DNA of 64,000 bases from Anthoceros angustus (Eukaryota > Plantae > Anthocerotophyta), in NCBI GenBank assembly GCA_010909165.1, contig VJWM01000187.1, positions 62,001 to 126,000 on the forward strand, written 5' to 3'. The position numbers and the translations under genes were made by a program. Of this stretch, positions 45,748 to 61,357 are shown one piece after another. The notes under the pieces are model-generated. The model was given only the letters and a program-made list of their open reading frames with translations. It was not told the origin of the DNA and searched no databases. The stretch's first letter is position 1; every line of letters begins with the position of its first letter.

Positions 45748-48700
45748 TCACGGCCGACCCTTACAACTACAACCACCACTTGCGAATCGATGCACACGGT
45801 ACCCATCCCTTACAACAATGTCTCTCTGCTCAAGCCTTGACATGATCTCCGTGGAACTATGGCAGTCACTGCACATGCGTAGATTCTTCGTTACCACCAG
45901 AGGTGTCCCACCCGGAGTGTTCAACAGACCAAACGCCAGCGCCAGCTTCTCAGCATGCCCACAAAGCGCATCTTCCTTTTCCTTCTCACCCAGTGGCTTC
46001 AACACCAACTTTGTCTGAGGTACGTGGCCTCCTTCCTGCTTTAGACGAGCATTTGTGCTCTCCACCTTAAGCACAATATCCTCTCTCCGTTCTCCAACCA
46101 AGAATCTATGTACCTGCTTATTCACCTCAATGGTTGCCACGGCAGGTTTCTTGTTAGCTCCTGCTAACATTCTCTGTGCTTCGATCCTATCTGCATCTCT
46201 CCACCTACCCGCATCTGCAAAGGCATTGGCCATGAGCACATGTGCAGACGTGTTTAGAGGGTCCAGCCTAACAATGCTTTCAAAACACCACATCGCCCTC
46301 TCTATATCCCCGTGACTTTTGCAAGCATTCAACAAAGCCGTCAAGCCCACAACATTACTTTGGCCCCCGCATGATAATAGCATCTTCTCAGCCTCATCTA
46401 AATGGCCCGCACGCCCAAGAAGATCAACCATGCAGGTGTAATGCTCAATAGTAGGTTTGATGCCATGCTGTTCAGCCATGGAATCAAAGTGCTTGCGACC
46501 CTCATGGACCAGTCCCCCATGACTGCATGCTACTAGAAGGCAAGTAAAAGTAGCATCATCAGGCTCAATCCCGGCAACTAACATCTCCTCAAAACAAGCT
46601 AGTGCCTTGTGACCTTCATCACAAGTACCATACCCAGATATCAGGGCATTCCATGTCACCACATCCTTTGTGGCCATGCTGTCAAAAACCTGGCGTGCAT
46701 CTTCCAGTTCACCACATTTTGCATACATGTCCACCAGGCAGTTGCCCACATCCAGCAGTCCTCTTTCACAATCTGTGAGTGCAGCTGCCTGCCCTTCTGT
46801 AAGGCACCAGTGCTTGCACAGGCCTTCAGAAGGCAAGCAAAAGTAACATGGTCAGCCAAAATGAGGCCCTCCTCCTCCATTTGTCCATACACAAGCGCCT
46901 CTTGGCGAGTCCTTGCTGTGCATACCCAGCAATCAGGGCATTCCATGTCACCACATCCTTTGTGTCAAAAACCTGGCGTGCATCTTCCAGTTCACCACAT
47001 TTTGCATACATGTCCACCAGGCAGGTGCCCACCACTATGTCATCCAGCAGTCCTCTTTCAACAATCTGAGTGCAGCTGCCTGCCCTTCTGTAAGGCACCA
47101 GTGCTTGCACAGGCCTTCAGAAGGCAAGCAAAAGTAACATGGTCAGCCAAAATGAGGCCCTCCTCCTCCATTTGTCCATACAAAGCAAGAGCCTCTTGGC
47201 CGAGTCCTTGCTGTGCAAACCCAGCTATCAGGGCATTCCATGTCACCACATCCTTTGTGGCCAAGCTGTCAAAAACCTGGCGTGCATCTTCCAGTTCACC
47301 ACATTTTGCATACATGTCCACCAGGCAGGTGCCCACCACTACGTTATCCAGCAGTCCTCTTTCCACAATCTGTGAGTGCAGCTGCCTGCCCTTCTGTAAG
47401 GCACCAGTGCTTGCACAGGCCTTCAGAAGGCAAGCAAAAGTAACATGGTCAGCCAAAATCAGGCCCTCCTCCATTTGTCCATACACAAGCGCCTCTTGGC
47501 GAGTCCTTGCTGTGCATACCCAGCAATCAGGGCATTCCATGTCACCACATCCTTTGTGGCCATGCTGTCAAAAACCTGGCGTGCATCTTCCAGTTCACCA
47601 CATTTTGCATACATGTCCACCAGGCAGTGCCCAACACTACTTTATCCAGCAGTCCCACAATCTGAGTGCAGCTGCCTGCCCTTCTGTAAGGCACCAGTGC
47701 TTGCACAGGCCTTCAGAAGGCAAGCAAAAGTAACATGGTCAGCCAAAATGAGGCCTGCTCCATTTGTCCATACACAACAAGCGCCTCTTGGCGAGTCCTT
47801 GCTGTGCATACCCAGCTATCAGGGCATTCCATGTCACCACATCCTTTGTGCTGTCAAAAACCTGGCGTGCATCTTCCAGTTCACCATTTTGCATACATGT
47901 CCACCAGGCAGGTGCCCACCACTATGTCATCCAGCAGTCCTCTTTCAACAATCTGAGTGCAGCTGCCTGCCCTTCTGTAAGGCACCAGTGCTTGCACAGG
48001 CCTTCAGAAGGCAAGCAAAAGTAACATGGTCAGCCAAAATGAGGCCCTCCTGCTCCATTTGTCCATACAAACAAGCGCCTCTGTCCGAGTCCTTTGTGCA
48101 TACCCAAATCAGCTCCATGTCACCACATCCTTTGGCCAAGCTGTCAAAAACCTGGCGTGCATCTTCCAGTTCACCACATTTTGCATACATGTCCACCAGG
48201 CAGGTGCCCACCACTTTATCCAGCAGTCCTTTCCACAATCTGCAGCTGCCTGCCCTTCTGTAAGGCACCAGTGCTTGCACAGGCCTTCAGAAGGCAAGCA
48301 AAAGTAACATGGTCAGCCAAAATAAGGCCCGCCTCCATTTGTCCATACACATTTGAGTCCTTGCATACCCAGCATCAGAGCATTCCATGTCACCACATCT
48401 TGTGCTGTCCCTGGCGTGCATCTTCCAGTTCACCACAGCATACCCAGATATCAGGGCATTCCATGTCACCACATCCTTTTGGCATGCTGTCAAAAACCTG
48501 GCGTGCATCTTCCAGTTCACCACATTTTGCATACATGTCCACCAGGCAGGTGCCCACACTACGTCATCCAGCAGTCCTCTTTTGACCATCTGTGAGTGCA
48601 GCTCCCTGCCCTTCTGTAAGGCATGCGCACCAGTGCTTGCACAGGCCTTCAGAAGGCAAGCAAAAGTAACATGGTCAGCCAAAAGCAGCCCTCCTGCTCC

Positions 48701-49856
48701 ATTTGTCCATACACAACAAGCGCCTCTTGGCCGAGCCCTTGCTTGCATACCCAGCAATCAGGGCATTCCATGTCACCACATCCTTTGTGGCCATGCTGTC
48801 AAAAACCTGGCGTGCATCTTTCAGTTCGCCACATTTTGCGTACATGTCCACTAGGGAGTTGCCAACAAACAAGTTAGCAGCAATGCCACTGTTCAACACA
48901 TGACAGTGCACTTCTCTGCCAGATTCCAAGTCAGCGGCGAATGCGCAAGCTTGAAGGGCAGCTACAAAGACATGAGCATCCGCCTTCACTCCTGACCTAC
49001 GCATCTCATAGTACAGTTGTATGGCCTTCTTAGGTTTCCCATGCTTAGCGTACGCGGAGATTATGGAAAACCACATGAAGGCATCTGGTTTGCCCACCCT
49101 GCTGAGCACATGCATGGCCTCCTCTAGCCTACCTCCACATGCATACATGCGCAAGATATGGTTCCCCAAGTACGCATCCGACTCGTACCCAAGTTTGACA
49201 CTGAGATCATGAACTCGTCGCCCCAAAATCAAATCCTTCTTAGCTGTACACAGTTTCAGCACAGTATAAAACAGAGCCGGAGAAATAGCAGAGCCTATCT
49301 GCGCCAGAGATTCCAGCGCTCCAACGGCCTCGGAAAGCTTCCCATGCTGACATAACGTGCTCACGGTTACAGCCGTTACGACGCCCATTTCCGGACCTGC
49401 ACGCCTGTCAAGTCCAGGCTTATTAGGAGAGCTGGATTCCGCAGGAGAGGCACCAATACCCATCTCCATATCCAAGGAAATGAGCCGCTCATCAACCCAA
49501 GCTGGCTTGAACATGTTGTTTAACCACAGCACCTCGCCGGACCCCTTACGCCGGAAGTCAGGCGAACGGGAGCTCTTCTTATCTCGTCTGTTGTCCCACC
49601 ACATGGTAGGGTCCAGGAAAAATTGTTTCCACAAGTGCTCCTGCTCCTGGCAACTACCATCGCTGGAAAACCTGTCCCAACCCACACATGTTTTCGGAGG
49701 TGGAAGTGCTGGGCTCCTTACACTGCTGCACCTGGAGGCTTTGTTTGCCAGGGGTAGACTCCCTAAGATGAGGTGGGCCGGAGCTCCTGGTAGAATCCCT
49801 GTATACACACCAATTTGTTGGATCCACAGCGGGTCCGGTTGCCATACTGTGGCCAT
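45748..49856 (-). CDS. PLS-PPR-DYW:KP (GRP) protein with N-terminal PDF motif; putative U-to-C editing factor; indels in the repeat array may be assembly errors
   Basis: Clean 5' ORF (48675-49856) and clean 3' ORF (45748-46836) ending [36 protein letters not shown]. Seven near-identical ~300-bp triplets with scattered 1-3-nt indels lie between them. Confidence 0.8.
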
Positions 49857-50540: not shown

Positions 50541-52337
50541 GATCAGCTGCTAGTTGGTGGGCATGGGACATGGCGTACCAAAGACAACAATGACTTCGTT
50601 AGTTTATAGGAGAGTTGTGAGACGAGGAGCACCCTATGATTGCATGCAGGATGCAATGCAGAGTTTGTCCCTTGCACCTAAAAAGGCACGCCTACAGTAC
50701 CGGCCATGCCCAACTGACAAGGTACTCCAAAGTGGCATCTGTTTGCCCCTCACACACCACAATGACATAGCCAGCCAGCTAATACTCAATGAACATCAAA
50801 ACAAAATGTGTATTTGGAGCCATGCTCTTGTACGGGCCTTTTTCTCATTTCATATCGATTTCATTCTTGTAGCTCAAGTTCACAAATTCCCTAGATGCCA
50901 CCTTCAGAATACTAGGAGTCACTTTTGTTGAGAGCCTTTCAATCTCTATCGTCTTATATACAGGCAGCATGACACATTCCGCAATGCTGGCCTCCTATGC
51001 TAAGCTTAAAGCACTTCTCTAACGTGATTATGTGCTTCTACTTAACAGGCCAAGTGTTGCTGTTGACCAAACTTCAGAGTTTGCCAATGGTTACATGCTC
51101 ACCAAACTTCAGAGTTTGCCAATGGTTACATCTACAGCAAGTTCAAGTATGACTAACTCTAGACACAATCCATCCGAAATGCTCGATATGGTCATGCAGA
51201 GTACCTAGGCATCCATTCATAGTCTGTTGTCAAACTCACCTTGCGACAGCGGTCCCTGAACCATGGTCACAATAGGGCAACCAGACCACAATAAAAAGGC
51301 ACCGGCCAATACGATTTTCAAGACGGCAAATGAACGTGAGAAATGCTGCATCATGGAGCCCAGTGGTAGGTAGACCCTTTTATTTACCCAACTACAATAG
51401 GTTAAGAGCAGTTAGTAATTTCTAAATAGACTATCACAGGGGCTAGTCCCCAAGGCTGGGGTTGTTTCCCAACGCCTTCATATAGACGAGAGATCCATCT
51501 ATGAAGTTCTATAAAGTCTTTACAATACATCTTTAGTTCATATTTATAAACCTATTTGATTTTTATAAATATATCTTATATATAAAAATGCATGGCACAG
51601 GCGCGTTGGAAAGTAGAAGCTACTTGACACGGGCGAATTTGCACCGGCAAATTCACACCAGCCTTTTTTTTCCTCTTCGATAGACGAATTGTCACTAAAA
51701 ATCCACATTATTATCCGTAAAATTCAGAATGAGAAATTGAAATTCCTCTTTCCGGATACCATGACAAGGGCAGTTGGCCGTTGGGATAGCAATCGGTGCT
51801 TCGTTGAAACATTTTAGGTTTTTGAAACGCGGAGACATTATCGCGATATTACAATTTCCAAGGTGTGGGTTCGTCACGTCCCTTGCGAGGCGACCATACC
51901 ATAGGGTAGGTCATGTCTGCCTTTTCTTTTTTTGGCGACAATCGGCATGGGAATATGGTTTGATTTCAAGACTTGATATTTGGTGAGATCGTCCGTTAGG
52001 TCAGTGCATGTTGTACATTGTACAAGACGCGCAAATGTTTGTTTCCATGCTGACAGAGATGTGACGTCCTACAAAAATGCTCGGATTTGATGCCAAGTTG
52101 CCCGGCATTTTGAGCACCTAGCTGAGTTCTTGTCAGTGTAGTATATGCGGGATCCTTGGTGGATGCTCGTACAGCGGATGACTTTTCATGCGGAGCAGAA
52201 GGTCTGCATCCAGCGACATCGGTACATGTGTACAGTTATGATCTGTTTCTCTCAGTTGTTGACAATATTTTCTTGATTTTGCTGGGCAGATTAGTGTAGG
52301 CAGGAAGGTTGTAAAGTAGAGTTCCAAGAGGGAGGAC

Positions 52338-55300
52338 ATGGGAGGAGGGGAGGACTTGTGTCTTGTGGAAGAATTTTCCCGGTGGCCTGGTGCACAAGAC
52401 TGCGGAGCTGTAGAGTTAGTTGAGAACGAGGAGAAGGGCGATGTATGGACAATATTGTCGTCTCCGTCGGCACAGACGGAAGGCACAACGCTGGCTGTTT
52501 CAGTCTCTGGAGATATCATAGAGGTGGAATGTATTTCGACGCCCTTGGAGTGCGCCTCTCCGTCTTTACAGATGGAAGACACAACGTTCGCTGTTTCAGT
52601 CTCTGGAGACATCTTAGAGGTGGAATGTGTTTCGACGCCCTTGGAGTGTGCGTCAAAGGCAGACTTGGACCATGACACCGCCTCACTTGGCATTAACTTA
52701 CTTGAACCTGGATCTGACGTGGCCTATGATACAAATGTGGTTTTACCCTCTGAATCAGTTCGTACTCAGGCTGAGATGCAGACGCGGGTGTGTGTTCACA
52801 GGGAAGAGGAAATACTAATTGGCGGTTCACAAGATGGGCACGTGACAAGCTCTGACCCCGAGCTTGTGCCTGAAAAGCTAGAGCATGCCTGTGTTAGTGG
52901 TGTTGAAACAAGACTGTACAATCTGATGCAGATCAAGGCTGATAGGGTAGATACAAGCTTGGTGGAGAAAATGCTTGTTTCTCCAGACCAGATCGTTGAA
53001 TTATGCAACGGTATCTTGGAAAAGTCGGCATCTTCTCAGGATGCAACAATCAACCTGGACTTTGACTCCCTCAACGGAGCTGCCCTGCATGTGGTTGGCC
53101 TCTATGGGAGCAAGGTGGTGCTCACTGGTATGCTTGAGAAACTCAAGCTTCTTGATGAAACCCTTGCAAGGTTGATGACCTCTGACGGGCTGGAGACAGG
53201 CCTATACGGAATTCATCACGGCAGTACGTTCTACGTATTTTATTGGCACCATGGGCAATGCCTCCAACCAGCCTCTAAGCAGTGTTGCAATTTCATCAGA
53301 TATGTGGCTGACCTGTGTGAGACGGTTTATGTCTGCCTCGACGCCACGGCACTGGATGCCTCCCACTTATCTGTTGCCGGGGGCATGAAACTGAAGAAAA
53401 AGCAGAGAACTCAAAGGTTGCAGGTGGCTATAGTCAAAGATTCAGAGAACGCGTTGAGTCTGCACCCAGGGTTTGATGTTCACCCAAAGCTTCCAGGTTA
53501 TGCCCAAGACAGGACTCCTGTGATGCTGAAGCTCTGTGAAGGGAGGCAGCGTGCTGCATTGCTGTACCCAGTCTTTCATCAATCGCAACAGATCCAGCGT
53601 TCTGTCTCCACAACTGTTAAAACAGAGAAGCTGCGTGAGGCTGTGAGGGACTGGTTGACCAATAACAACGTCGATATAAGCCGACTTTCAAAGCAGGAGT
53701 TGTCATTGTTTCTTCAGCATGCTGGTCTGCAGGAAAGTATAGATTACTGCAAGCTGCTCAAGGAAGCCAGTTGTAGAAGAACTGCTGACCAGCACCTGGC
53801 TGGTGAGGTGGGCACACTAGTACAGGAACAACAGCGACTGATCGGGGACATTCTTGTGAGCTGTTTGGAAGCATATCGGGTAATTCACTATCTTGATGAA
53901 GAAAAAGCACTAAGGCAAAGCTCACTACAAAAAAGGGAAGAATATGCCGATGACGACGTTTCTTCTCCCCCAGGACTCCATCCTTGGGGAGAAAGCACTG
54001 CTTCAGATCTTCTCGACCACGCAGGTGCCCAGCTTTTCGACGCTTGGGCAGGAAGTGAGAAGCAGCCTGATGCAACGGACTTACCCTCGGCTGTGGTCTT
54101 TGTGGGCTCTCAAGTGATTGTTGAGTCTGTAGATATTAGTCTCCCTCTCCTATGGGCAGAGGGTAACCTGTTTGTTGTGGAAGCTGCTGAGGGAAGCCGT
54201 GCAGGTCCTATTCTCCTAAAGCAGGACTTCGTGTTGACTAATACAGGTGAGAACATCAGCCACAGAGTAGTTGTAGAGGCCCCTGAAAGAGATTGCCCAG
54301 AAGGTCCTGTACCTACATCTCGGTCTCTGCGGTGCAAGGTAAGAGGAGGTGAGGACAATTCCTGCCATCTCATACAGCTCAAGGTGGTGGGGCATTCAGG
54401 GATCGTGAAATGGATTAAGGCATCCATCAACATTGATGTGTCCAACCTCTTGGAGAGATCAAAGAAGCTAGCCTACTTGACGTTGGGTGCTGACGACGTT
54501 CCTCGTGCCGTATCCGAAGCCTTGGTTCGAGAAGCTCGGGAAATCATGGATTCTGCTGATGCGCTGAACCTCTTCAGTCGACATTTCTCAGATGAGAGAC
54601 TCAGTGATCTGCTAGAAAACACCGCCTTTGAGTCCCAAGCGCAGTACGCCCTCGTCGCCGTGGAAGCTCGAGAAGCCGTCAGAGCTGCATACACGCGAGC
54701 CTGGTTCGATACTAATCTCAGGATTACGAGGGCAGCGAAGAGATGCATTCAGCCATCTCTGCGGGCCAGAATGCAATTTCAGAAGCAGCAAGCCACCTCC
54801 TCTTTGCTGAAGTCGCTGGATGAAGAGGAGTCAAAGTTCTTAGACTCAGTTGACAAATTGAAGCTGTGCTCACAGGCAGGAAGGCCAAGCCTCACCATAA
54901 CAACCTGTTCGCCAGCCAGGAAGACTGATACCGTCAAGTATGCCCAGAAGAGAGGCCTTGTGACCTTGGCTTTGGAATACACCTGTGAGGTCACTCAGCC
55001 CGAGCGAATAACATGGAATGTGATTGAACTCACCCCAATGAAGAAAGATCTTGACAAACTGACTGTTAAAGAGGACGTTATTGTGCCCAAGTGTTCTCCA
55101 CCTACCAAGTTGATCAACGTGGATGCAAGCTCTGAGACAGTCCTGCTTGTAGTGCTTATCAAAACAGGTGAAGTCCTGGTGGTGGTCAAAGATACAAATG
55201 ATTCAACTGTGAGCGTCTATGTGACCAGGAAGATGGGTTCTGAGATGACACCTGCCAACCTGGTCAAATTGTTCAGAAGAGGCTGTGACCTGGTAGCTTA

Positions 55301-58300
55301 CGATGAATGCCTGGAATATTTGGCTCTGTATGACAAGACTTCGAGTAAGATCAGCATCTTCAGATTCTGTGACTCCTTTCGGAAGCTGCACTGGGTGGAC
55401 CATGATTTGCTGCTGTCTGAGTACACCGGAAGCAGGAATCTCACTGCTTTGATGTTCATTCCGGACAAGAGGGCCCTTATTCTCATAGATGATGCACTAA
55501 AAGTACGAGTCTTGGAGTTCGAAGGTGCTACCGTGATCAGACCCAGAGCCATTTGCCTTCCAGGTCCATTTGCACTTGCCAAGGTCTCGATGGATGGATC
55601 GTGCCTTCTCGTCTTCCACGGACCTGGTAGTCAGGATGGTGACGCTGCGGAACCTGACGAGGTTTCTAGTTTGGATGTGTACTTTCTGGACGACAGTATG
55701 GCGAGTCTGAAGAGCATCCAACTTGAGCACTCTATGCTGGGCACTGCCAGAATAGATGCCGCTCTTGTAGCATTTGGTGCTCAGCTACATCTTATTTTGC
55801 TTGATACGTCAGATCCAGCCAGAGGACTGCAGTCGCACATTATGAAGATCAGTCTGGCAGCTGAAGTTCGTCGGTTGCAGAAAGTGGGAAAGTTGCGATC
55901 AACAGAGCCGGAAATAACTGATGCGATTCATGCAACCTGCCCAGAGCTTGACTATGTATACCAGATATTTGACAAGTACTCAACCAGCCCTCCACTTGTG
56001 GGAAAGGTGAGAGACTTCCACCTGCATGTGGTCCTGGGAGGTAAAGGACCTGAATCCGAGACAGATGGGCTTCGAAAAAAGTGTGAGCTGTATGTGACAT
56101 CCTTGATGAACAGGCTCGAGACTGAGGAGGGCAAGAACTTTTCCAAGCTGAAATTTTCTGTGGCTTCGGGTACACGAGCCCACTATGTTGTTGGAAATGA
56201 GCTTAAGGACAGCTTGGAACCTAGGAACCTCATGGTCATGGGAGACTGGATACGGCTGCTGATTTGTTTGGTGCCCATCCAAATAGCAAGGGCAGAAAAC
56301 AACACACTCACTCCCTTGATTGACGGCCTGCAAATGTCGTCAAATCATGACTACGTTGATGCTGTGTCCCTATCCAACGGCCTCCGTTTTGGCTTATATG
56401 ATTCTGTCCTAGAAAACTGGAGACAGCCTGTGAAGGTCATATCATCCATGGGCAAGCAAAGTAGCGGCAAATCTTACCTGCTGAATCACCTCAGTGGGTC
56501 GATACTGGATGTCGCTGGAGGACGTTGCACCGATGGCATATGGATGACTATGCGGCCCTCTCCAGGCTGCCTGTACGTCCTGCTGGATTTTGAAGGATTA
56601 GGCAGCTTTGAAAGGAGTGACCAAGAGGATGTGTTACTGTCTGTCCTGAATGCTGCGGTCAGCAACATCACCATCTTCAATAAAAAGGTAACAGGCCCTG
56701 AAGCTCTGCGTTCTCGACTGATTGCATACTTCTTCACTCTGTGGACTGAAAACATTTTCACGTTCTGCAGGATTTCAATCTCGACAAAGATACGGAGGCG
56801 GTGTTTCAGCGCTTCCAGAAGGCAGTCAGCCTTGTGAAGGAGGATACCCGATTTTTCAAAGGGGTATTTTACATTGCCATCAAGGATGTGGTGTCGTCAG
56901 ATGTAGATGAGCTGAAAGACGAGTTCATCAAAAAAATAGACCTCCTACAAGGAAAGGCTGAGGAAAGCTTTCTTACAAAGATGTATGGGAGCGGCCTCGT
57001 AGTTGCTGCAATGTCCCCAATTCAGAGAAGTGAGTACCACGAAAACGTGGAGGAAATTGCAGAGGAGGTGGAAGACCTGCAAACAGGTTTTCCTAGCGGC
57101 AGACAGTTTGCCGCGGACTTGAAGCTCATCACAGCTCAAATCAGCACCAGGGACTGGTCTCCTACTGACACCAAACGAGAAGCCCTGAAACTGGATCTTC
57201 TGAGAAAACACCTCAGCACAGCCATCAACCTGGGAACTCTTTTGAAGGACACTCCTCTGACCAACCTCGACACAGACGAGGTGGTGTTGGACTTGCCCGT
57301 CAACATCGATGGCCACATATTCGACATCCCTGATGCAGGCCTGGAGCTCTTCACAGATTCTGACCAGCAAGCGCTTGGCAGCACAATCGACACTCTGAGA
57401 CCAAAATTCGAGACGGTTTGGGAGAGATCTGGGGAGAAGGACGAAGCCTGGCACAAAAGCTTCAACAATTTTCTATTAACACTGGCAAACAGACGCCGCA
57501 GTAGAGTTCTCGACTGGCTGGTTTGCAACACTGCAGAATTTGCACTGGACAGCGATGTTCAGACCCTGCGTTTGGAAGCCGCCTCCACGCTGGCTGGGCT
57601 CAAGCAAGCCCTGACTCTCTGCAGCTGCAAATGCAAGGACTGCCTCCTCTACTGTGTTCTGGGAAAGGCGCATCCCGGTGGGCATAGCTGTATGGGAAGC
57701 CATATATGTGCCAAGTCCTGTACATACTGCGTCCAGGAGGGAGGCGAGGAGCAGAAGCCATGCACGCACCCAAGCGGGCACGAAGGCGCCCATGACTGCA
57801 AAATCAGGACCCATTGCTGCGGGAAGGAATGCAGGTTCAAAGGGCAGTCTCAGAACTGCGCCCACGCTTGTGCCTTCAAGCCATACCATGTTGGAGAGCA
57901 CAGATGTAACACCAGCCACCACCTGTGTGGAGAGAAATGTTCTTTGCCATCTTGTGTGAATCTCTGCGATATTGCCCTGGACTCCGACCATGATCAGCAT
58001 AAATGCCGCGAGAAGATGTGCCCCATCACCTGCTCCATGGAGGGGTGTAAGAGAACATGCGGATCATCCGATCACTTCCACGCCCTGGAATCTGACAAAC
58101 ATCTCTGTGACCAAGAGCACGTATGTAACGCGCCGTGTGCAGCAAGAGGATGGTGTGATATACATACCGAAGTGATCCATAACCAAACCTTCAATGGCAA
58201 GAGGAGTTGTTTTGTGATTGAGCAAGTGTCGGAGCAGCATGGTGTGAGGAAGACTTGCTGCTTCCCAATTCCGGCAGGGGAGGAGCAGCATGAAGGGCCG

Positions 58301-59551
58301 CACTGTCACAGCACCAACCTCAATGCGCCACACACCTGTGAGGAGAGGTGTAAGGCATGTGGGTACCTGTGCCACTTGGAAATCGGGCACGGAGGCAAAC
58401 ACGAAACCACGCATGGCAACATGAGGAACGTTATGTTTGCGTCGGAGAAGGAGGAGATTGAGCTGGAAGGTCGTGAGTACGCATGGGGTGACTCAGGAGT
58501 GGCCGAGCTGTGCATGCTTGTCTGCGAGAAACAGGGGAGAGGTCATACCCATCTCGCCAAATGCGAGCCCAATGCATATGGAACATGTCAAAGGCAGTAT
58601 AAGGGCGCCAGGCATGAAAGATCGCCATACGGACCTGACTTCCACGTCGCCAAAGATGAGTTGACACACCAGGCGTATTGGGAGGAATTGGGCTTCAAGG
58701 ATCCCTGCCCCGAGGAACATCGCATGGAATTCGAACTCTGTAACCACTACTGCCACTCGGAGGAACACCGGGATACTTCTGACGGCAGGTCTTTCTGCAC
58801 TCAGCCGCTATGGCACCTCCCTGTGGCCAAAAGCGCCCTGCCCACAGGATATGTCACCGAAGATGGTCATGTGTTCGACTGCAAGCATGCCGCAAGCCTC
58901 CAGCATATCATCTTTGTAATCGACAAGTCCAGGTCCATGGAAGGCAACGACATCTTCCCCACCCTTCGGCTGTTGGAAACCACTCACCGCAACAGGTTGG
59001 GGGCTGTCTTTGAAGCCATTTACAACTTCCTGCAGACGAGAAAGAGAGCAGCCCGAAGGAAAGGAGCCCGGCAGGACATCATATCCATCGTACTCTTTGA
59101 TGACAATAGAGATATAGTGGCGCAGACATGGGAAAACAACCCAGACCCTCTCCTCCACCTTCTCCTGCACAAAATTCCAAGATTCGGCACCAACTACGCC
59201 AGCGGCCTGGGTGGAGCAGAGGAGGTAATGAATCGCGCAGCCTTCGGGGGAACAGCGCAAGTGAAGTTGGCCAATTCTGCACCTGTAATCATCTTCTTCA
59301 GCGACGGTCGCAACGGAAATCACAGTGTCAACCCAGTTGAAGCCGTTCAGAAAATGATGAAAGACCACCCACAACTGATAGTCCACACCCTCCTGTTTGG
59401 AAGTCGGGCTGATCTTCACACCTTGGAGGCCATGGCGGCGGCTGGAAATGGCACATTCACGCTCAGCCTGGACGACGTGCAGCTTGCAAGGAGCTTTGAG
59501 CGACTGGCGCACAGCCTCAGGCCGCAGGTGGCATCCCTTATTGAATCGTGA
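52338..59551 (+). CDS. Very large GTPase (GBP/atlastin/VLIG-like G domain) with Cys/His-rich Zn-finger-like repeats and C-terminal vWA domain, ~2376 aa
   Basis: Exon 52338-56687, GT-AG intron 56688-56770 (phase 0) and exon 56771-59551 join in frame. Motifs: G1 GKQSSGKS, G2 GGRCTDGIW, G3 LLDFEGLG; Cys-rich region ~57620-58880; vWA MIDAS FVIDKSRSM..GTNY..FFSDG. The start codon is uncertain. Confidence 0.85.
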
Positions 59552-60451: not shown

Positions 60452-61357
60452 TTACATAGGCTTGAAATTGCGATAAGCAACAACAGCGTAGAAGGGGTCT
60501 CTGCCGGCTGCCACGCCCTGAAGGAATCGGCTCAACTGTGCAAACCAGCCCTGATGCTGCTCGGAGCCAGGTTGGGGGAGCTTGCGCACCACCTCTGCCT
60601 GCGTGAACCCGGCAACGCACTGGAAGTACTGCACCACCAGCTGCACGCGGCTGTACGCAGAGCCGTCCCGCCAGGCTGCCACCGCCTTATCGTAGAACAT
60701 GCGGTTGCTGAAGCTCATGACGCACACTCCACCGGGTCGCAGCACGCGGTAGATTTCTGCAAACACTTTCTCAGGTTGCTGGAGGTACTGCACGCTCACA
60801 GCGCACAGCACTGCGTCGAAGCTGGCATCGGCCGCGGCCAACTCCTGCGCCTGGTTCAGGTCGTTGATGAAGAAATGGTCCAGCCTGGGGTTTCGAGCAA
60901 GCTCAGCGGCGTTGAGGCCATGGCCGACCACTCGCTTGAAGCGCCTCTCAGGAGGAAGATGGCTCACCCAGGAGCTCATGAGATCCAGCACCTCAGCTCC
61001 CTCCGGCACCCTCTCCCTGTAGAGCTGTGTGAGGGAGGCTAGGAAGGCGTCGTCCACATGCTTGACAAATCTGGGGAAGCTGTAAAATTCCCGGTCTGAG
61101 GCCAAATTCAGCTTCTGCCTGCCCTCGTTGGAAAGCACTCTACGTTGGATTTCCCCGCCCCTTGTAACAGGGCCTGCATCACTGCACCGAGGTGTCAACT
61201 GTTCCATTCTAAATCTCAGAGAGACGGAGGGACAGGGCTTGCCAATCCGTACGCATGCTCGCAATTGATCAACTCCTGCACAGGGCTTGCCAATCCGTAC
61301 GCATGCTCGCAATTGATCAACTCCTGCACAGGCCAATGTCAGAGACACGGCTGCCAT
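60452..61357 (-). CDS. Class I SAM-dependent methyltransferase (Methyltransf_11-like), probably plastid-targeted, single exon
   Basis: DREFYSFPRFVKHVDD, VLDLMSSWVSHLP, GHGLNAAEL..NPRL, FDAVLCAVSVQYL, EIYRVLRPGG..SFSNRMF, with a transit-peptide-like N-terminus. Confidence 0.9.
   Translation of the reverse strand: MAAVSLTLACAGVDQLRACVRIGKPCAGVDQLRACVRIGKPCPSVSLRFRMEQLTPRCSDAGPVTRGGEIQRRVLSNEGRQKLNLASDREFYSFPRFVKHVDDAFLASLTQLYRERVPEGAEVLDLMSSWVSHLPPERRFKRVVGHGLNAAELARNPRLDHFFINDLNQAQELAAADASFDAVLCAVSVQYLQQPEKVFAEIYRVLRPGGVCVMSFSNRMFYDKAVAAWRDGSAYSRVQLVVQYFQCVAGFTQAEVVRKLPQPGSEQHQGWFAQLSRFLQGVAAGRDPFYAVVAYRNFKPM

What the first reader, a model, noticed from the sequence alone, without database searches (positions are those of the whole stretch)
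52338..59551. Giant GTPase-zinc finger-vWA gene: candidate uncharacterised immune-type system
Seen: ~2376 aa with one intron, in a region where ordinary genes have many. It comprises a long N-terminal region with a beta-strand-rich, propeller-like stretch (~55000-55800), a GBP/VLIG-type G domain (GKQSSGKS, RCTDGIW, DFEG), a helical stalk, ~400 aa of C/H-rich repeats resembling NF-X1-type fingers, and a vWA domain with an intact DxSxS..T..D MIDAS. Established: GBP and very large inducible GTPases act in animal cell-autonomous immunity, and this architecture differs from plant RHD3 and GBPL proteins. From memory, similar architectures occur in fungi and protists (unverified). Inference: an ancient or horizontally acquired defence or symbiosis-surveillance GTPase absent from model angiosperms.
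Basis: partly seen in the sequence, partly recalled or inferred. Interest (0 to 1): 0.8.

Follow-up and report, generated by a model that had tools for sequence, protein, structure and literature searches.

The report
Giant GTPase–zinc–vWA gene, old family
This non-flowering plant has an intact, two-exon gene for a 2376-residue protein that joins a propeller-shaped domain, a GBP/VLIG-like GTP switch, a large zinc-binding block and a vWA binding domain. It belongs to an old, unstudied family found across eukaryotes but not seen in flowering plants, and a defence role is plausible but untested.

Summary
Exon 1 (52338-56687) and exon 2 (56771-59551) are joined across an 83-nt GT..AG intron and encode 2376 aa. 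The junction is seen in a relative's spliced contig, the intron sits at the same place in a 65%-identical copy, and land-plant homologues run through the junction without a gap.

The layout, in order:
- a variable N-terminus
- a conserved alpha/beta domain
- a beta-propeller split by a helical insert
- a GBP/RHD3/VLIG-clade G domain with G1-G4 motifs intact
- a helical stalk
- a 425-aa Cys/His block
- a vWA domain with a complete MIDAS

The Cys/His block is not NF-X1 by any test. It matched no Pfam family or PDB sequence, yet it is the best-conserved part.

Collinear relatives occur in liverworts, a moss, a lycophyte, ferns, gymnosperms, streptophyte and red algae, oomycetes, dinoflagellates, amoebae, a malawimonad, fungi, a sponge and an acoel. 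No angiosperm appeared. Land-plant copies form one clade, so inheritance looks vertical, not horizontal. I found no paper on the family.

The scan found this family before on other DNA of the same genome: a frame-broken copy, a six-copy tandem array and a head-to-head pair.

The immune role remains an inference.

The parts
52338..59551 (+). Whole coding region of the giant GTPase gene (2376 aa, two exons)
   Evidence: ORFs; translations; full-length collinear homologues
52338..56687 (+). Exon 1 (1450 codons)
   Evidence: An in-frame stop lies 6 codons upstream of the ATG
56688..56770 (+). Single intron, 83 nt, GT..AG, phase 0, inside the G domain
   Evidence: Sequence. A relative's contig joins 56687 to 56771. 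Same intron position in L001. No gap at the junction in homologues
56771..59551 (+). Exon 2 (926 codons plus stop)
   Evidence: AF2 model with mean pLDDT 88.2
52338..52889 (+). Lineage-specific acidic N-terminal extension (aa 1-184). It contains a 96-bp tandem duplication at 52461-52648
   Evidence: No homologue aligns before about aa 146-185. Tandem repeat. Listed differences from relatives at aa 106-190 are spread over all codon positions (7 of 19 at third positions; my count, table 3)
52890..53372 (+). Conserved N-terminal alpha/beta domain (aa 185-345), fold family unresolved. It carries the conserved GxYGxK motif (GLYGSK at 53097-53114)
   Evidence: Conserved block across the family. pLDDT 84-96 through aa 185-334, falling to about 75 at the domain's end. 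No Pfam or Atlas match. 16 of 20 listed differences from relatives at aa 221-389 are at third codon positions (my count)
53418..53621 (+). Four-strand sheet (aa 361-428) that fold searches include in the propeller: a probable first blade
   Evidence: Strands at model residues 177-244. Propeller matches span model residues from about 185 to 990
53622..54869 (+). Poorly conserved, mostly helical insert with a small beta subdomain (aa 429-844)
   Evidence: long helices, pLDDT 45-80. 15% identity to plant homologues and 11% to others
54870..55892 (+). Main body of the beta-propeller (aa 845-1185)
55941..56408 (+). Conserved alpha/beta region before the P-loop (aa 1202-1357), including the family motif LICLVPIQIARAE (56259-56297)
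   Evidence: (40% identity to plant homologues)
56409..56687 (+). G domain, first half: G1 GKQSSGKS (56451-56474), switch I RCTDGIW (56523-56543), G3 DFEG (56586-56597)
   Evidence: Pfam GBP, URGCP_GTPase and RHD3_GTPase hits. PDB GBP1/2/5 hits. Family conservation
56771..57145 (+). G domain, second half (exon 2 aa 1-125), with the G4-like AIKD at 56876-56887
   Evidence: 50% identity to plant homologues. dN/dS 0.04 against L001
57146..57610 (+). Helical stalk or middle domain (exon 2 aa 126-280)
   Evidence: Helices 132-154, 199-214, 224-253 and 261-281 at pLDDT about 90 or higher
57611..58885 (+). Family-specific Cys/His-rich block, presumably zinc-binding (exon 2 aa 281-705)
   Evidence: 47 Cys and 40 His. 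About 60 Cys/His columns at least 90% conserved. pLDDT about 90. No Pfam, PDB or named Atlas match. It is the most conserved region across eukaryotes
58886..59524 (+). vWA domain with MIDAS: DKSRS at 58922-58936, T807 within 59186-59206, D845 within 59294-59308

Best explanation
What it is (about 0.9). The locus is an intact, transcribed member of an old, eukaryote-wide, uncharacterised family of soluble giant GTPases. Databases label its members only as 'VWFA domain-containing' or 'VLIG-type G domain-containing' proteins. Every full-length member has the same order of parts: a conserved N-terminal alpha/beta domain, a beta-propeller interrupted by a helical insert, a dynamin-superfamily large G domain of the GBP/RHD3-Sey1/VLIG branch, a helical stalk, a roughly 430-residue Cys/His block, and a C-terminal vWA domain with a complete metal-ion-dependent adhesion site (MIDAS).

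How it most likely works (inferred, about 0.5). As in GBPs, atlastin/Sey1p and GVIN1, GTP binding drives G-domain dimerisation, and hydrolysis moves the stalk. The rigid Cys/His block passes this movement to the vWA domain, whose MIDAS grips an acidic residue of a partner or of a neighbouring protomer. The propeller, which evolves faster, picks the target. The result would be a nucleotide-gated assembly or coat on a target.

Biological role (about 0.35-0.4). Cell-autonomous defence or conflict.

Origin in this plant. Vertical descent, followed by copy-number expansion.
For: Shown:
- Intact two-exon ORF with a supported splice junction.
- G1-G4 motifs intact and matching the family consensus.
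- G domains of 45 of 46 members hit URGCP_GTPase, RHD3_GTPase and GBP. The family profile hits GBP5/2/1 (E 1e-13 to 1e-10) and Sey1p (3e-10) in the PDB.
- vWA fold and conserved MIDAS.
- Propeller fold.
- Cys/His ligand columns conserved across 53 members.
- No transmembrane segment and no CaaX box.
- The family is large and collinear: 310 representative clusters below 1e-30, many of 2000-2600 aa. Named members span land plants, algae, oomycetes, dinoflagellates, amoebae, fungi and animals.
- Land plants form one clade with support 100.
- Purifying selection: dN/dS about 0.14 against L001, lowest in the G domain and the Cys/His block. Differences from relatives in the conserved N domain fall mainly at third codon positions (my count).

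Indirect support for a conflict role:
- At least 15 Cryptomeria loci with closely numbered tags, and adjacent Ceratopteris loci.
- Several copies in this genome, according to earlier scan notes.
- A long terminal branch of 0.83 against about 0.4 for the liverwort and moss.
- The N-terminal half is less conserved than the C-terminal half.
- RING, B-box, SAM, C2 or ankyrin additions in other lineages.
- The giant GTPase GVIN1 forms an antibacterial coat (bioRxiv 10.1101/2025.03.24.645074).
Against: - No experiment or expression-under-challenge data bears on function.
- Transcription in this very organism is not shown. Only short, low-depth contigs of uncertain kind were found (run X1).
- The GBP1 P-loop arginine aligns with Ser here, so the catalytic details cannot be copied from GBP1.
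- The fold of the Cys/His block and of the N-terminal domain could not be compared on their own.
- Conservation from algae to conifers under purifying selection also fits a housekeeping role.
- Gene-family expansion and loss are not specific to immunity.
- dS against L001 is saturated (1.3-3.4), so the dN/dS values are rough.
Confidence: 0.55

Rival explanations
1. It is a housekeeping mechano-GTPase. The family would remodel an organelle, membrane contact or large ribonucleoprotein or protein complex in all cells, using the MIDAS as a hook, much as the AAA+ motor Rea1/midasin does. It would have no role in defence. Flowering plants would have replaced it with another system.
For: - Ancient, vertically inherited and under purifying selection.
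- Its closest sequence relatives include RHD3/Sey1p, which fuse ER membranes.
- Intracellular vWA proteins such as Rpn10 and TFIIH p44/Ssl1 are among the best structural matches.
- The family is present in free-living unicellular eukaryotes.
Against: - No membrane anchor.
- Complete apparent loss in angiosperms, and many lineage-specific tandem copies, are unusual for a core housekeeping gene.
- Variable N-terminal additions such as RING, B-box and SAM.
Confidence: 0.3
2. It was acquired horizontally by this plant lineage from a fungus, oomycete or other microbe.
For: Fungi, oomycetes and other microbes carry the same architecture. The gene has only one intron.
Against: - The window protein lies inside a land-plant clade with support 100, next to liverwort, moss, lycophyte, fern and gymnosperm copies. 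Fungal and oomycete clades are far away.
- Its best identities are to plant proteins, 45-52%.
- The intron position is shared with a 65%-identical copy.
- No bacterial or archaeal relative was found.
Confidence: 0.03
3. It is a decaying or non-functional duplicate of a multi-copy family, and the open frame is kept only by chance or recent duplication.
For: The terminal branch is long.
Against: - 7.1 kb of uninterrupted frame.
- All G motifs, the MIDAS residues and the conserved Cys/His columns are intact.
- dN/dS is about 0.14.
- Orthologues about 93-95% identical are transcribed and spliced in relatives, and their differences fall mainly at third codon positions.
Confidence: 0.05

Closest known systems
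Guanylate-binding proteins (human GBP1/2/5; Pfam PF02263)
   Same: It has a large G domain of the same branch. The P-loop, switch I Thr and DxEG motifs align residue for residue with GBP1. The Pfam GBP hit is above the curated cut-off. A helical region follows the G domain.
   Different: - The GBP1 P-loop arginine aligns with Ser.
- No GBP_C domain and no CaaX box.
- It is four times larger, with propeller, Cys/His and vWA domains that GBPs lack.
- The plant GBP review never mentions vWA, VLIG or bryophytes (PMC12489281).
Very large inducible GTPases (VLIG-1, GVIN1, URGCP; Pfam PF25683)
   Same: Both are giant cytosolic GTPases. URGCP_GTPase is the best-scoring Pfam model for 45 of 46 family G domains. 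UniProt names some members 'VLIG-type G domain-containing'. GVIN1 shows that such proteins can form an antimicrobial coat.
   Different: - Scores stay below the Pfam cut-off (32-44 bits against 55) and cover only about profile positions 186-285 of 396.
- GVIN1 is described with two LG domains and no zinc block or vWA domain.
RHD3 / Sey1p / atlastin ER-fusion GTPases (Pfam PF05879)
   Same: Sey1p gives the longest profile alignment to the family G domain (positions 13-210, E 3e-10). The GxQSxGKS type of P-loop is, from my memory, typical of RHD3 and Sey1p.
   Different: - The Pfam RHD3_GTPase hit is below the cut-off (20-33 bits against 42.4).
- There is no C-terminal transmembrane hairpin, and no hydrophobic segment at all in exon 2, so it cannot act as a membrane-anchored fusogen.
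NTPase motors coupled to a MIDAS/vWA domain (Rea1/midasin; MoxR-vWA pairs such as CbbQ/CbbO and NorQ/NorD)
   Same: The logic of a nucleotide-driven motor with a MIDAS domain that grips a substrate. The NorQ-NorD vWA domain is among the structural matches.
   Different: Those motors are AAA+ ATPases, not dynamin-like GTPases. This is a functional analogy from established knowledge, not homology outside the vWA domain.
NF-X1-type zinc fingers (NFX1, ZNFX1; Pfam PF01422)
   Same: The half-pattern C-x(1-6)-H-x-C-x3-C occurs four times in the Cys/His block.
   Different: - No PF01422 hit in the window protein or in any of 53 family members at E up to 1.
- The full NF-X1 pattern, written from my memory, matches 0 of 53 members.
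TRIM-NHL and WD40 beta-propellers
   Different: There is no NHL or WD40 Pfam hit, and identity is only 10-12%. The propeller seems to be interrupted by a 415-residue insert. A shared fold does not show a shared function.

Membership tests
vWA domain superfamily | Sequence match to a vWA model above the curated cut-off | tested here: met
   PF13519 VWA_2 scores 37.5 bits against a cut-off of 27. PF00092 scores 23.7 against 23.8, which is borderline. The family profile hits PTMP1, ITIH and CLCA1 vWA domains, E 2e-12 to 1e-8
vWA domain superfamily | Rossmann-like vWA fold | tested here: met
vWA domain superfamily | Complete MIDAS (DxSxS, T, D) | tested here: met
   D718-K-S720-R-S722, T807 and D845 are present. 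D718, S722, T807 and D845 are at least 90% conserved in 71 sequences
GBP/RHD3/VLIG branch of dynamin-superfamily GTPases (GB1/RHD3-type and VLIG-type G domains) | G1 P-loop, switch I Thr, G3 DxxG and a G4-like motif in a large G domain | tested here: met
   GKQSSGKS, RCTDGIW, DFEG and AIKD are present and match the family consensus. The first three align to GBP1
Guanylate-binding proteins proper | P-loop arginine finger (GBP1 R48, from established knowledge) | tested here: not met
   The Arg of GBP1's LYRTGKS aligns with Ser of KQSSGKS. The family consensus is GKQSxGKS
Guanylate-binding proteins proper | C-terminal GBP helical domain (GBP_C); isoprenylation CaaX box in some members | tested here: not met
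   No GBP_C hit at E up to 0.1. The C-terminus is ...ASLIES
VLIG / URGCP family | Match to PF25683 above its cut-off over the whole model | tested here: not met
   32.4 bits here and 15-44 bits in four full-length homologues, against a cut-off of 55. Only about profile positions 186-285 of 396 are covered
RHD3 / Sey1p / atlastin | Match to PF05879 above its cut-off | tested here: not met
   20.6 bits here and 27-34 bits in homologues, against a cut-off of 42.4
RHD3 / Sey1p / atlastin | Two transmembrane segments after the stalk | tested here: not met
   The highest Kyte-Doolittle 19-residue mean in exon 2 is 1.21. The exon 1 maxima are charged beta strands
NF-X1-type zinc finger | Match to PF01422, or to the NF-X1 Cys/His spacing pattern | tested here: not met
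   No Pfam hit in 53 members at E up to 1. The full pattern, written from memory, matches 0 of 53
Beta-propeller fold | Radial four-stranded blades; structural match to solved propellers | tested here: met
The uncharacterised giant GTPase-Cys/His-vWA family itself | Collinear full-length similarity to members from other eukaryotes | tested here: met
   Both exons align in order to proteins of 2000-2600 aa. Examples are Calypogeia P0175, Ginkgo P0177, Cryptomeria P0004, Selaginella P0151, Adiantum P0171, Galdieria P0156 and Gefionella P0009
Immune or conflict protein (functional class) | Induction by, or a phenotype towards, pathogens or symbionts | not testable with these tools
   Only indirect genomic signs are available

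The most novel reading that the evidence does not exclude
The family is a cell-autonomous immune sensor-switch-effector as old as the last eukaryotic common ancestor. Here a dynamin-like GTPase plays the part that STAND NTPases play in NLRs. The propeller recognises a non-self or damaged target. GTP-driven assembly builds a coat or signalling platform. The zinc block and MIDAS recruit or cross-link effectors. Non-flowering plants would keep and expand this arm of immunity, and angiosperms would have lost it. The conserved N-terminal alpha/beta domain may be a degenerate second G-like domain, as in GVIN1.
Probability: 0.3. Interest if true: 0.85.

Novelty: new variant of a known kind. Interest (0 to 1): 0.6.

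Why it matters
If the inferred role holds, plants outside the angiosperms would have a defence GTPase family related to animal GBPs and giant GTPases, with its own target-binding and effector modules. This would link animal interferon-type GTPase defence to a pan-eukaryotic ancestor and show an immune component that model flowering plants cannot reveal.

Even without an immune role, three things are worth follow-up:
- A 430-residue zinc-binding block with no known relatives is the most conserved part of a protein found from red algae to conifers.
- The pairing of a dynamin-like GTPase with a MIDAS domain has no described precedent that I could find.
- The family is experimentally accessible in mosses, ferns, hornworts, fungi and oomycetes.

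Tried and rejected
Searches and comparisons that gave nothing:
- Word-indexed search with all of exon 1 found nothing. Its words come from the first 500 residues, which are largely lineage-specific. Restricting the search to aa 1100-1450 worked.
- NF-X1 fingers were rejected.
- The Atlas feature search gave nothing for the N-terminal domain. For the Cys/His block it gave only unnamed fungal fragment clusters.
- Whole-model fold searches were filled by the vWA domain or by the propeller.
- Scan for bacterial and archaeal relatives: A3 had no usable conserved stretch. The A4 patterns matched 74 stretches, but none was a relative.

Literature: six searches found no description of the family. The plant GBP review and the 2020 paper on vWA conflict systems do not mention it.

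Limits on what the data can say:
- dN/dS against L001 is limited by saturated dS, and no site test for positive selection was possible.
- The sequencing runs are Logan contigs of uncertain kind. They show splicing in relatives, but not expression level, strand or induction.
Full report
GENE MODEL

The + strand carries two long overlapping ORFs, 52338-56837 and 56801-59551. Exon 1 ends after ...ITIFNKK at 56687. A GT at 56688 and an AG at 56769-56770 bound an 83-nt intron, and exon 2 starts with DFNLDKD at 56771. An in-frame stop lies six codons upstream of the ATG at 52338.

Three independent observations support the junction:
- A contig of a related organism (run X3, about 94% identical) is laid up to 56688 and then continues with 27 letters. 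These letters are the start of exon 2 with two substitutions (table 7).
- Contig L001, which carries a 65%-identical copy, has an intron after the same NKK codon.
- In every land-plant homologue the residue aligned to exon 1 aa 1450 is followed directly by the residue aligned to exon 2 aa 1.

Contigs of two relatives cover all of 52200-58150, so orthologues are transcribed. For the window's own organism only short, low-depth contigs of uncertain kind were found.

ANATOMY

Exon 1:
- aa 1-184 is acidic and aligns to no homologue. It holds a 96-bp tandem duplication at 52461-52648.
- aa 185-345 is a confidently modelled alpha/beta domain, conserved across the family and with no Pfam or Atlas match.
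- All these matches span model residues from about 185 to 990. The propeller therefore seems to use a sheet at aa 361-428 and the main body at aa 845-1185, separated by a poorly conserved helical insert.
- aa 1202-1357 is a conserved alpha/beta lead-in to the G domain.

The G domain is split by the intron. It has GKQSSGKS, RCTDGIW, DFEG and AIKD, each matching the family consensus.

THE CYS/HIS BLOCK

It has 47 Cys and 40 His in 431 residues. In 53 family members, 25 columns are invariant, 23 of them Cys or His, and another 59 are at least 90% conserved, most of them Cys or His. It is the best-conserved region between plants and other eukaryotes, at 37% identity against 18-28% for the other domains.

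It has no Pfam hit in any member at E up to 1, no PDB sequence match at E up to 10, and only unnamed fungal fragment clusters in the Atlas. The NF-X1 spacing pattern, which I wrote from memory, matches none of the 53 members. Only its first half occurs, four times here. So 'NF-X1-like' is a resemblance of flavour, not membership. Its fold could not be searched on its own.

WHICH GTPASE

- G domains of 45 of 46 members hit URGCP_GTPase (best E 1e-13), RHD3_GTPase and GBP.
- Only the GBP hit passes its curated cut-off.
- The family profile finds GBP5/2/1 and Sey1p in the PDB.
- The residue aligned to the GBP1 P-loop arginine is Ser.

The domain therefore belongs to the GBP/RHD3-Sey1/VLIG branch of the dynamin superfamily, as a separate subfamily.

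FAMILY AND HISTORY

An exhaustive HMMER search with exon 2 found 1156 representative clusters, 310 of them below 1e-30. Many are 2000-2600 aa long and match over the whole query. Exon 1 aligns collinearly to the same proteins.

Named members are:
- Liverworts: Calypogeia, Riccia.
- Moss: Ceratodon.
- Lycophyte: Selaginella.
- Ferns: Adiantum, Ceratopteris.
- Gymnosperms: Ginkgo, Cryptomeria, Taxus.
- Algae: Klebsormidium, Mesostigma, Galdieria.
- Other groups: dinoflagellates, many oomycetes, Reticulomyxa, amoebozoans, the malawimonad Gefionella, a basidiomycete, a sponge and an acoel.

No angiosperm protein appeared in three searches, although gymnosperm and fern proteins score E 1e-70 to 1e-90.

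A quick maximum-likelihood tree puts all land-plant copies in one clade (SH-aLRT 100). Ferns and gymnosperms sit together in it, as do the liverwort, moss and lycophyte. The window protein is on its own long branch at the base. Red algae are in the sister group, and fungal and oomycete clades lie far away. This supports vertical descent and rejects horizontal acquisition. The two G-motif patterns found no bacterial or archaeal relative.

Cryptomeria has at least 15 loci, many with closely numbered tags on one chromosome, and Ceratopteris has adjacent loci. Earlier notes of this scan report more copies in this same genome: a frame-broken copy, a six-copy tandem array and a head-to-head pair. 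I did not re-check those notes.

SELECTION

Against L001, dN/dS is about 0.14 overall. It is 0.04 in the G domain, 0.07 in the Cys/His block, and 0.23-0.26 in the stalk and vWA domain. dS is saturated, so these values are rough.

Table 3 lists 40 of 404 differences from relatives, and I counted their codon positions by hand. In aa 221-389, 16 of 20 lie at third positions. In the unconserved aa 106-190, only 7 of 19 do.

MECHANISM (INFERRED)

By analogy with GBPs, atlastin/Sey1p and GVIN1, GTP binding should dimerise the G domains and hydrolysis should move the stalk. The Cys/His block would be a rigid zinc-stapled connector or binding surface. The MIDAS would grip an acidic side chain of a partner or of the next protomer. 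The propeller would select the target. This resembles the motor-plus-MIDAS logic of Rea1/midasin and the MoxR-vWA pairs, with a different motor.

A defence or conflict role fits several observations: copy-number dynamics, loss in angiosperms, the faster-evolving N-terminal half, RING, B-box, SAM, C2 or ankyrin additions in other lineages, and the coat-forming giant GTPase GVIN1. Nothing here tests that role, and a housekeeping remodelling function remains a serious rival.

LITERATURE

Six full-text searches and two targeted readings found no description of this family.

VERDICT

Ancient origin, absence from angiosperms in these searches and presence in fungi and protists are supported. Horizontal acquisition and NF-X1 fingers are not. 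An immune role is open.
- The gene is a new variant of a known kind: a dynamin-superfamily GBP/VLIG-like GTPase in an undescribed, conserved architecture.
- The same family was already noted by this scan elsewhere in this genome.

Noticed in passing
window 52461-52648: A 96-bp unit repeated twice (89% match) inside the coding region gives two 32-residue repeats in the lineage-specific N-terminal extension.
   Followed up: partly
window 54548-55342 and 56180-56378 (reads of relatives): In three runs of related organisms, extra contigs show a 'goes back 795' joint (55342 to 54548, with a 34-nt filler) and an opposite-strand joint (54583/55285). Depth rises to 127 at 56180-56378 in one run. Rearranged or additional paralogous copies probably exist in the relatives.
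   Followed up: no
   Followed up: partly
L001:1-351: A 65%-identical copy from another public run has its intron at exactly the same codon (after ...IFNKK). That intron is about 110 nt long, against 83 nt here.
   Followed up: yes
window 45748-46836 (-) and 48675-49856 (-): Upstream neighbours are PPR genes, one of them with E and DYW deaminase domains. An earlier scan note calls one of them a DYW:KP type, which points to a hornwort, lycophyte or fern genome.
   Followed up: partly
window 60452-61357 (-): The downstream ORF has a class I SAM-dependent methyltransferase domain (Methyltransf_11, E 2e-12). There is no evident link to the GTPase gene.
   Followed up: partly
homologues P0013, P0205, P0203, P0009, P0015, P0253, P0226 and others: Family members in other eukaryotes add RING, B-box (TRIM-like), SAM, C2 or ankyrin domains, according to precomputed Pfam hits. 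SAM sits at the N-terminus of Gefionella P0009, and many oomycete copies carry a RING.
   Followed up: partly
Cryptomeria japonica and Ceratopteris richardii records: Closely numbered locus tags on single chromosome-scale records (SUGI_0690960 to SUGI_0691520; KP509_35G015100 to KP509_35G015400) suggest tandem clusters of this family in a conifer and a fern.
   Followed up: no
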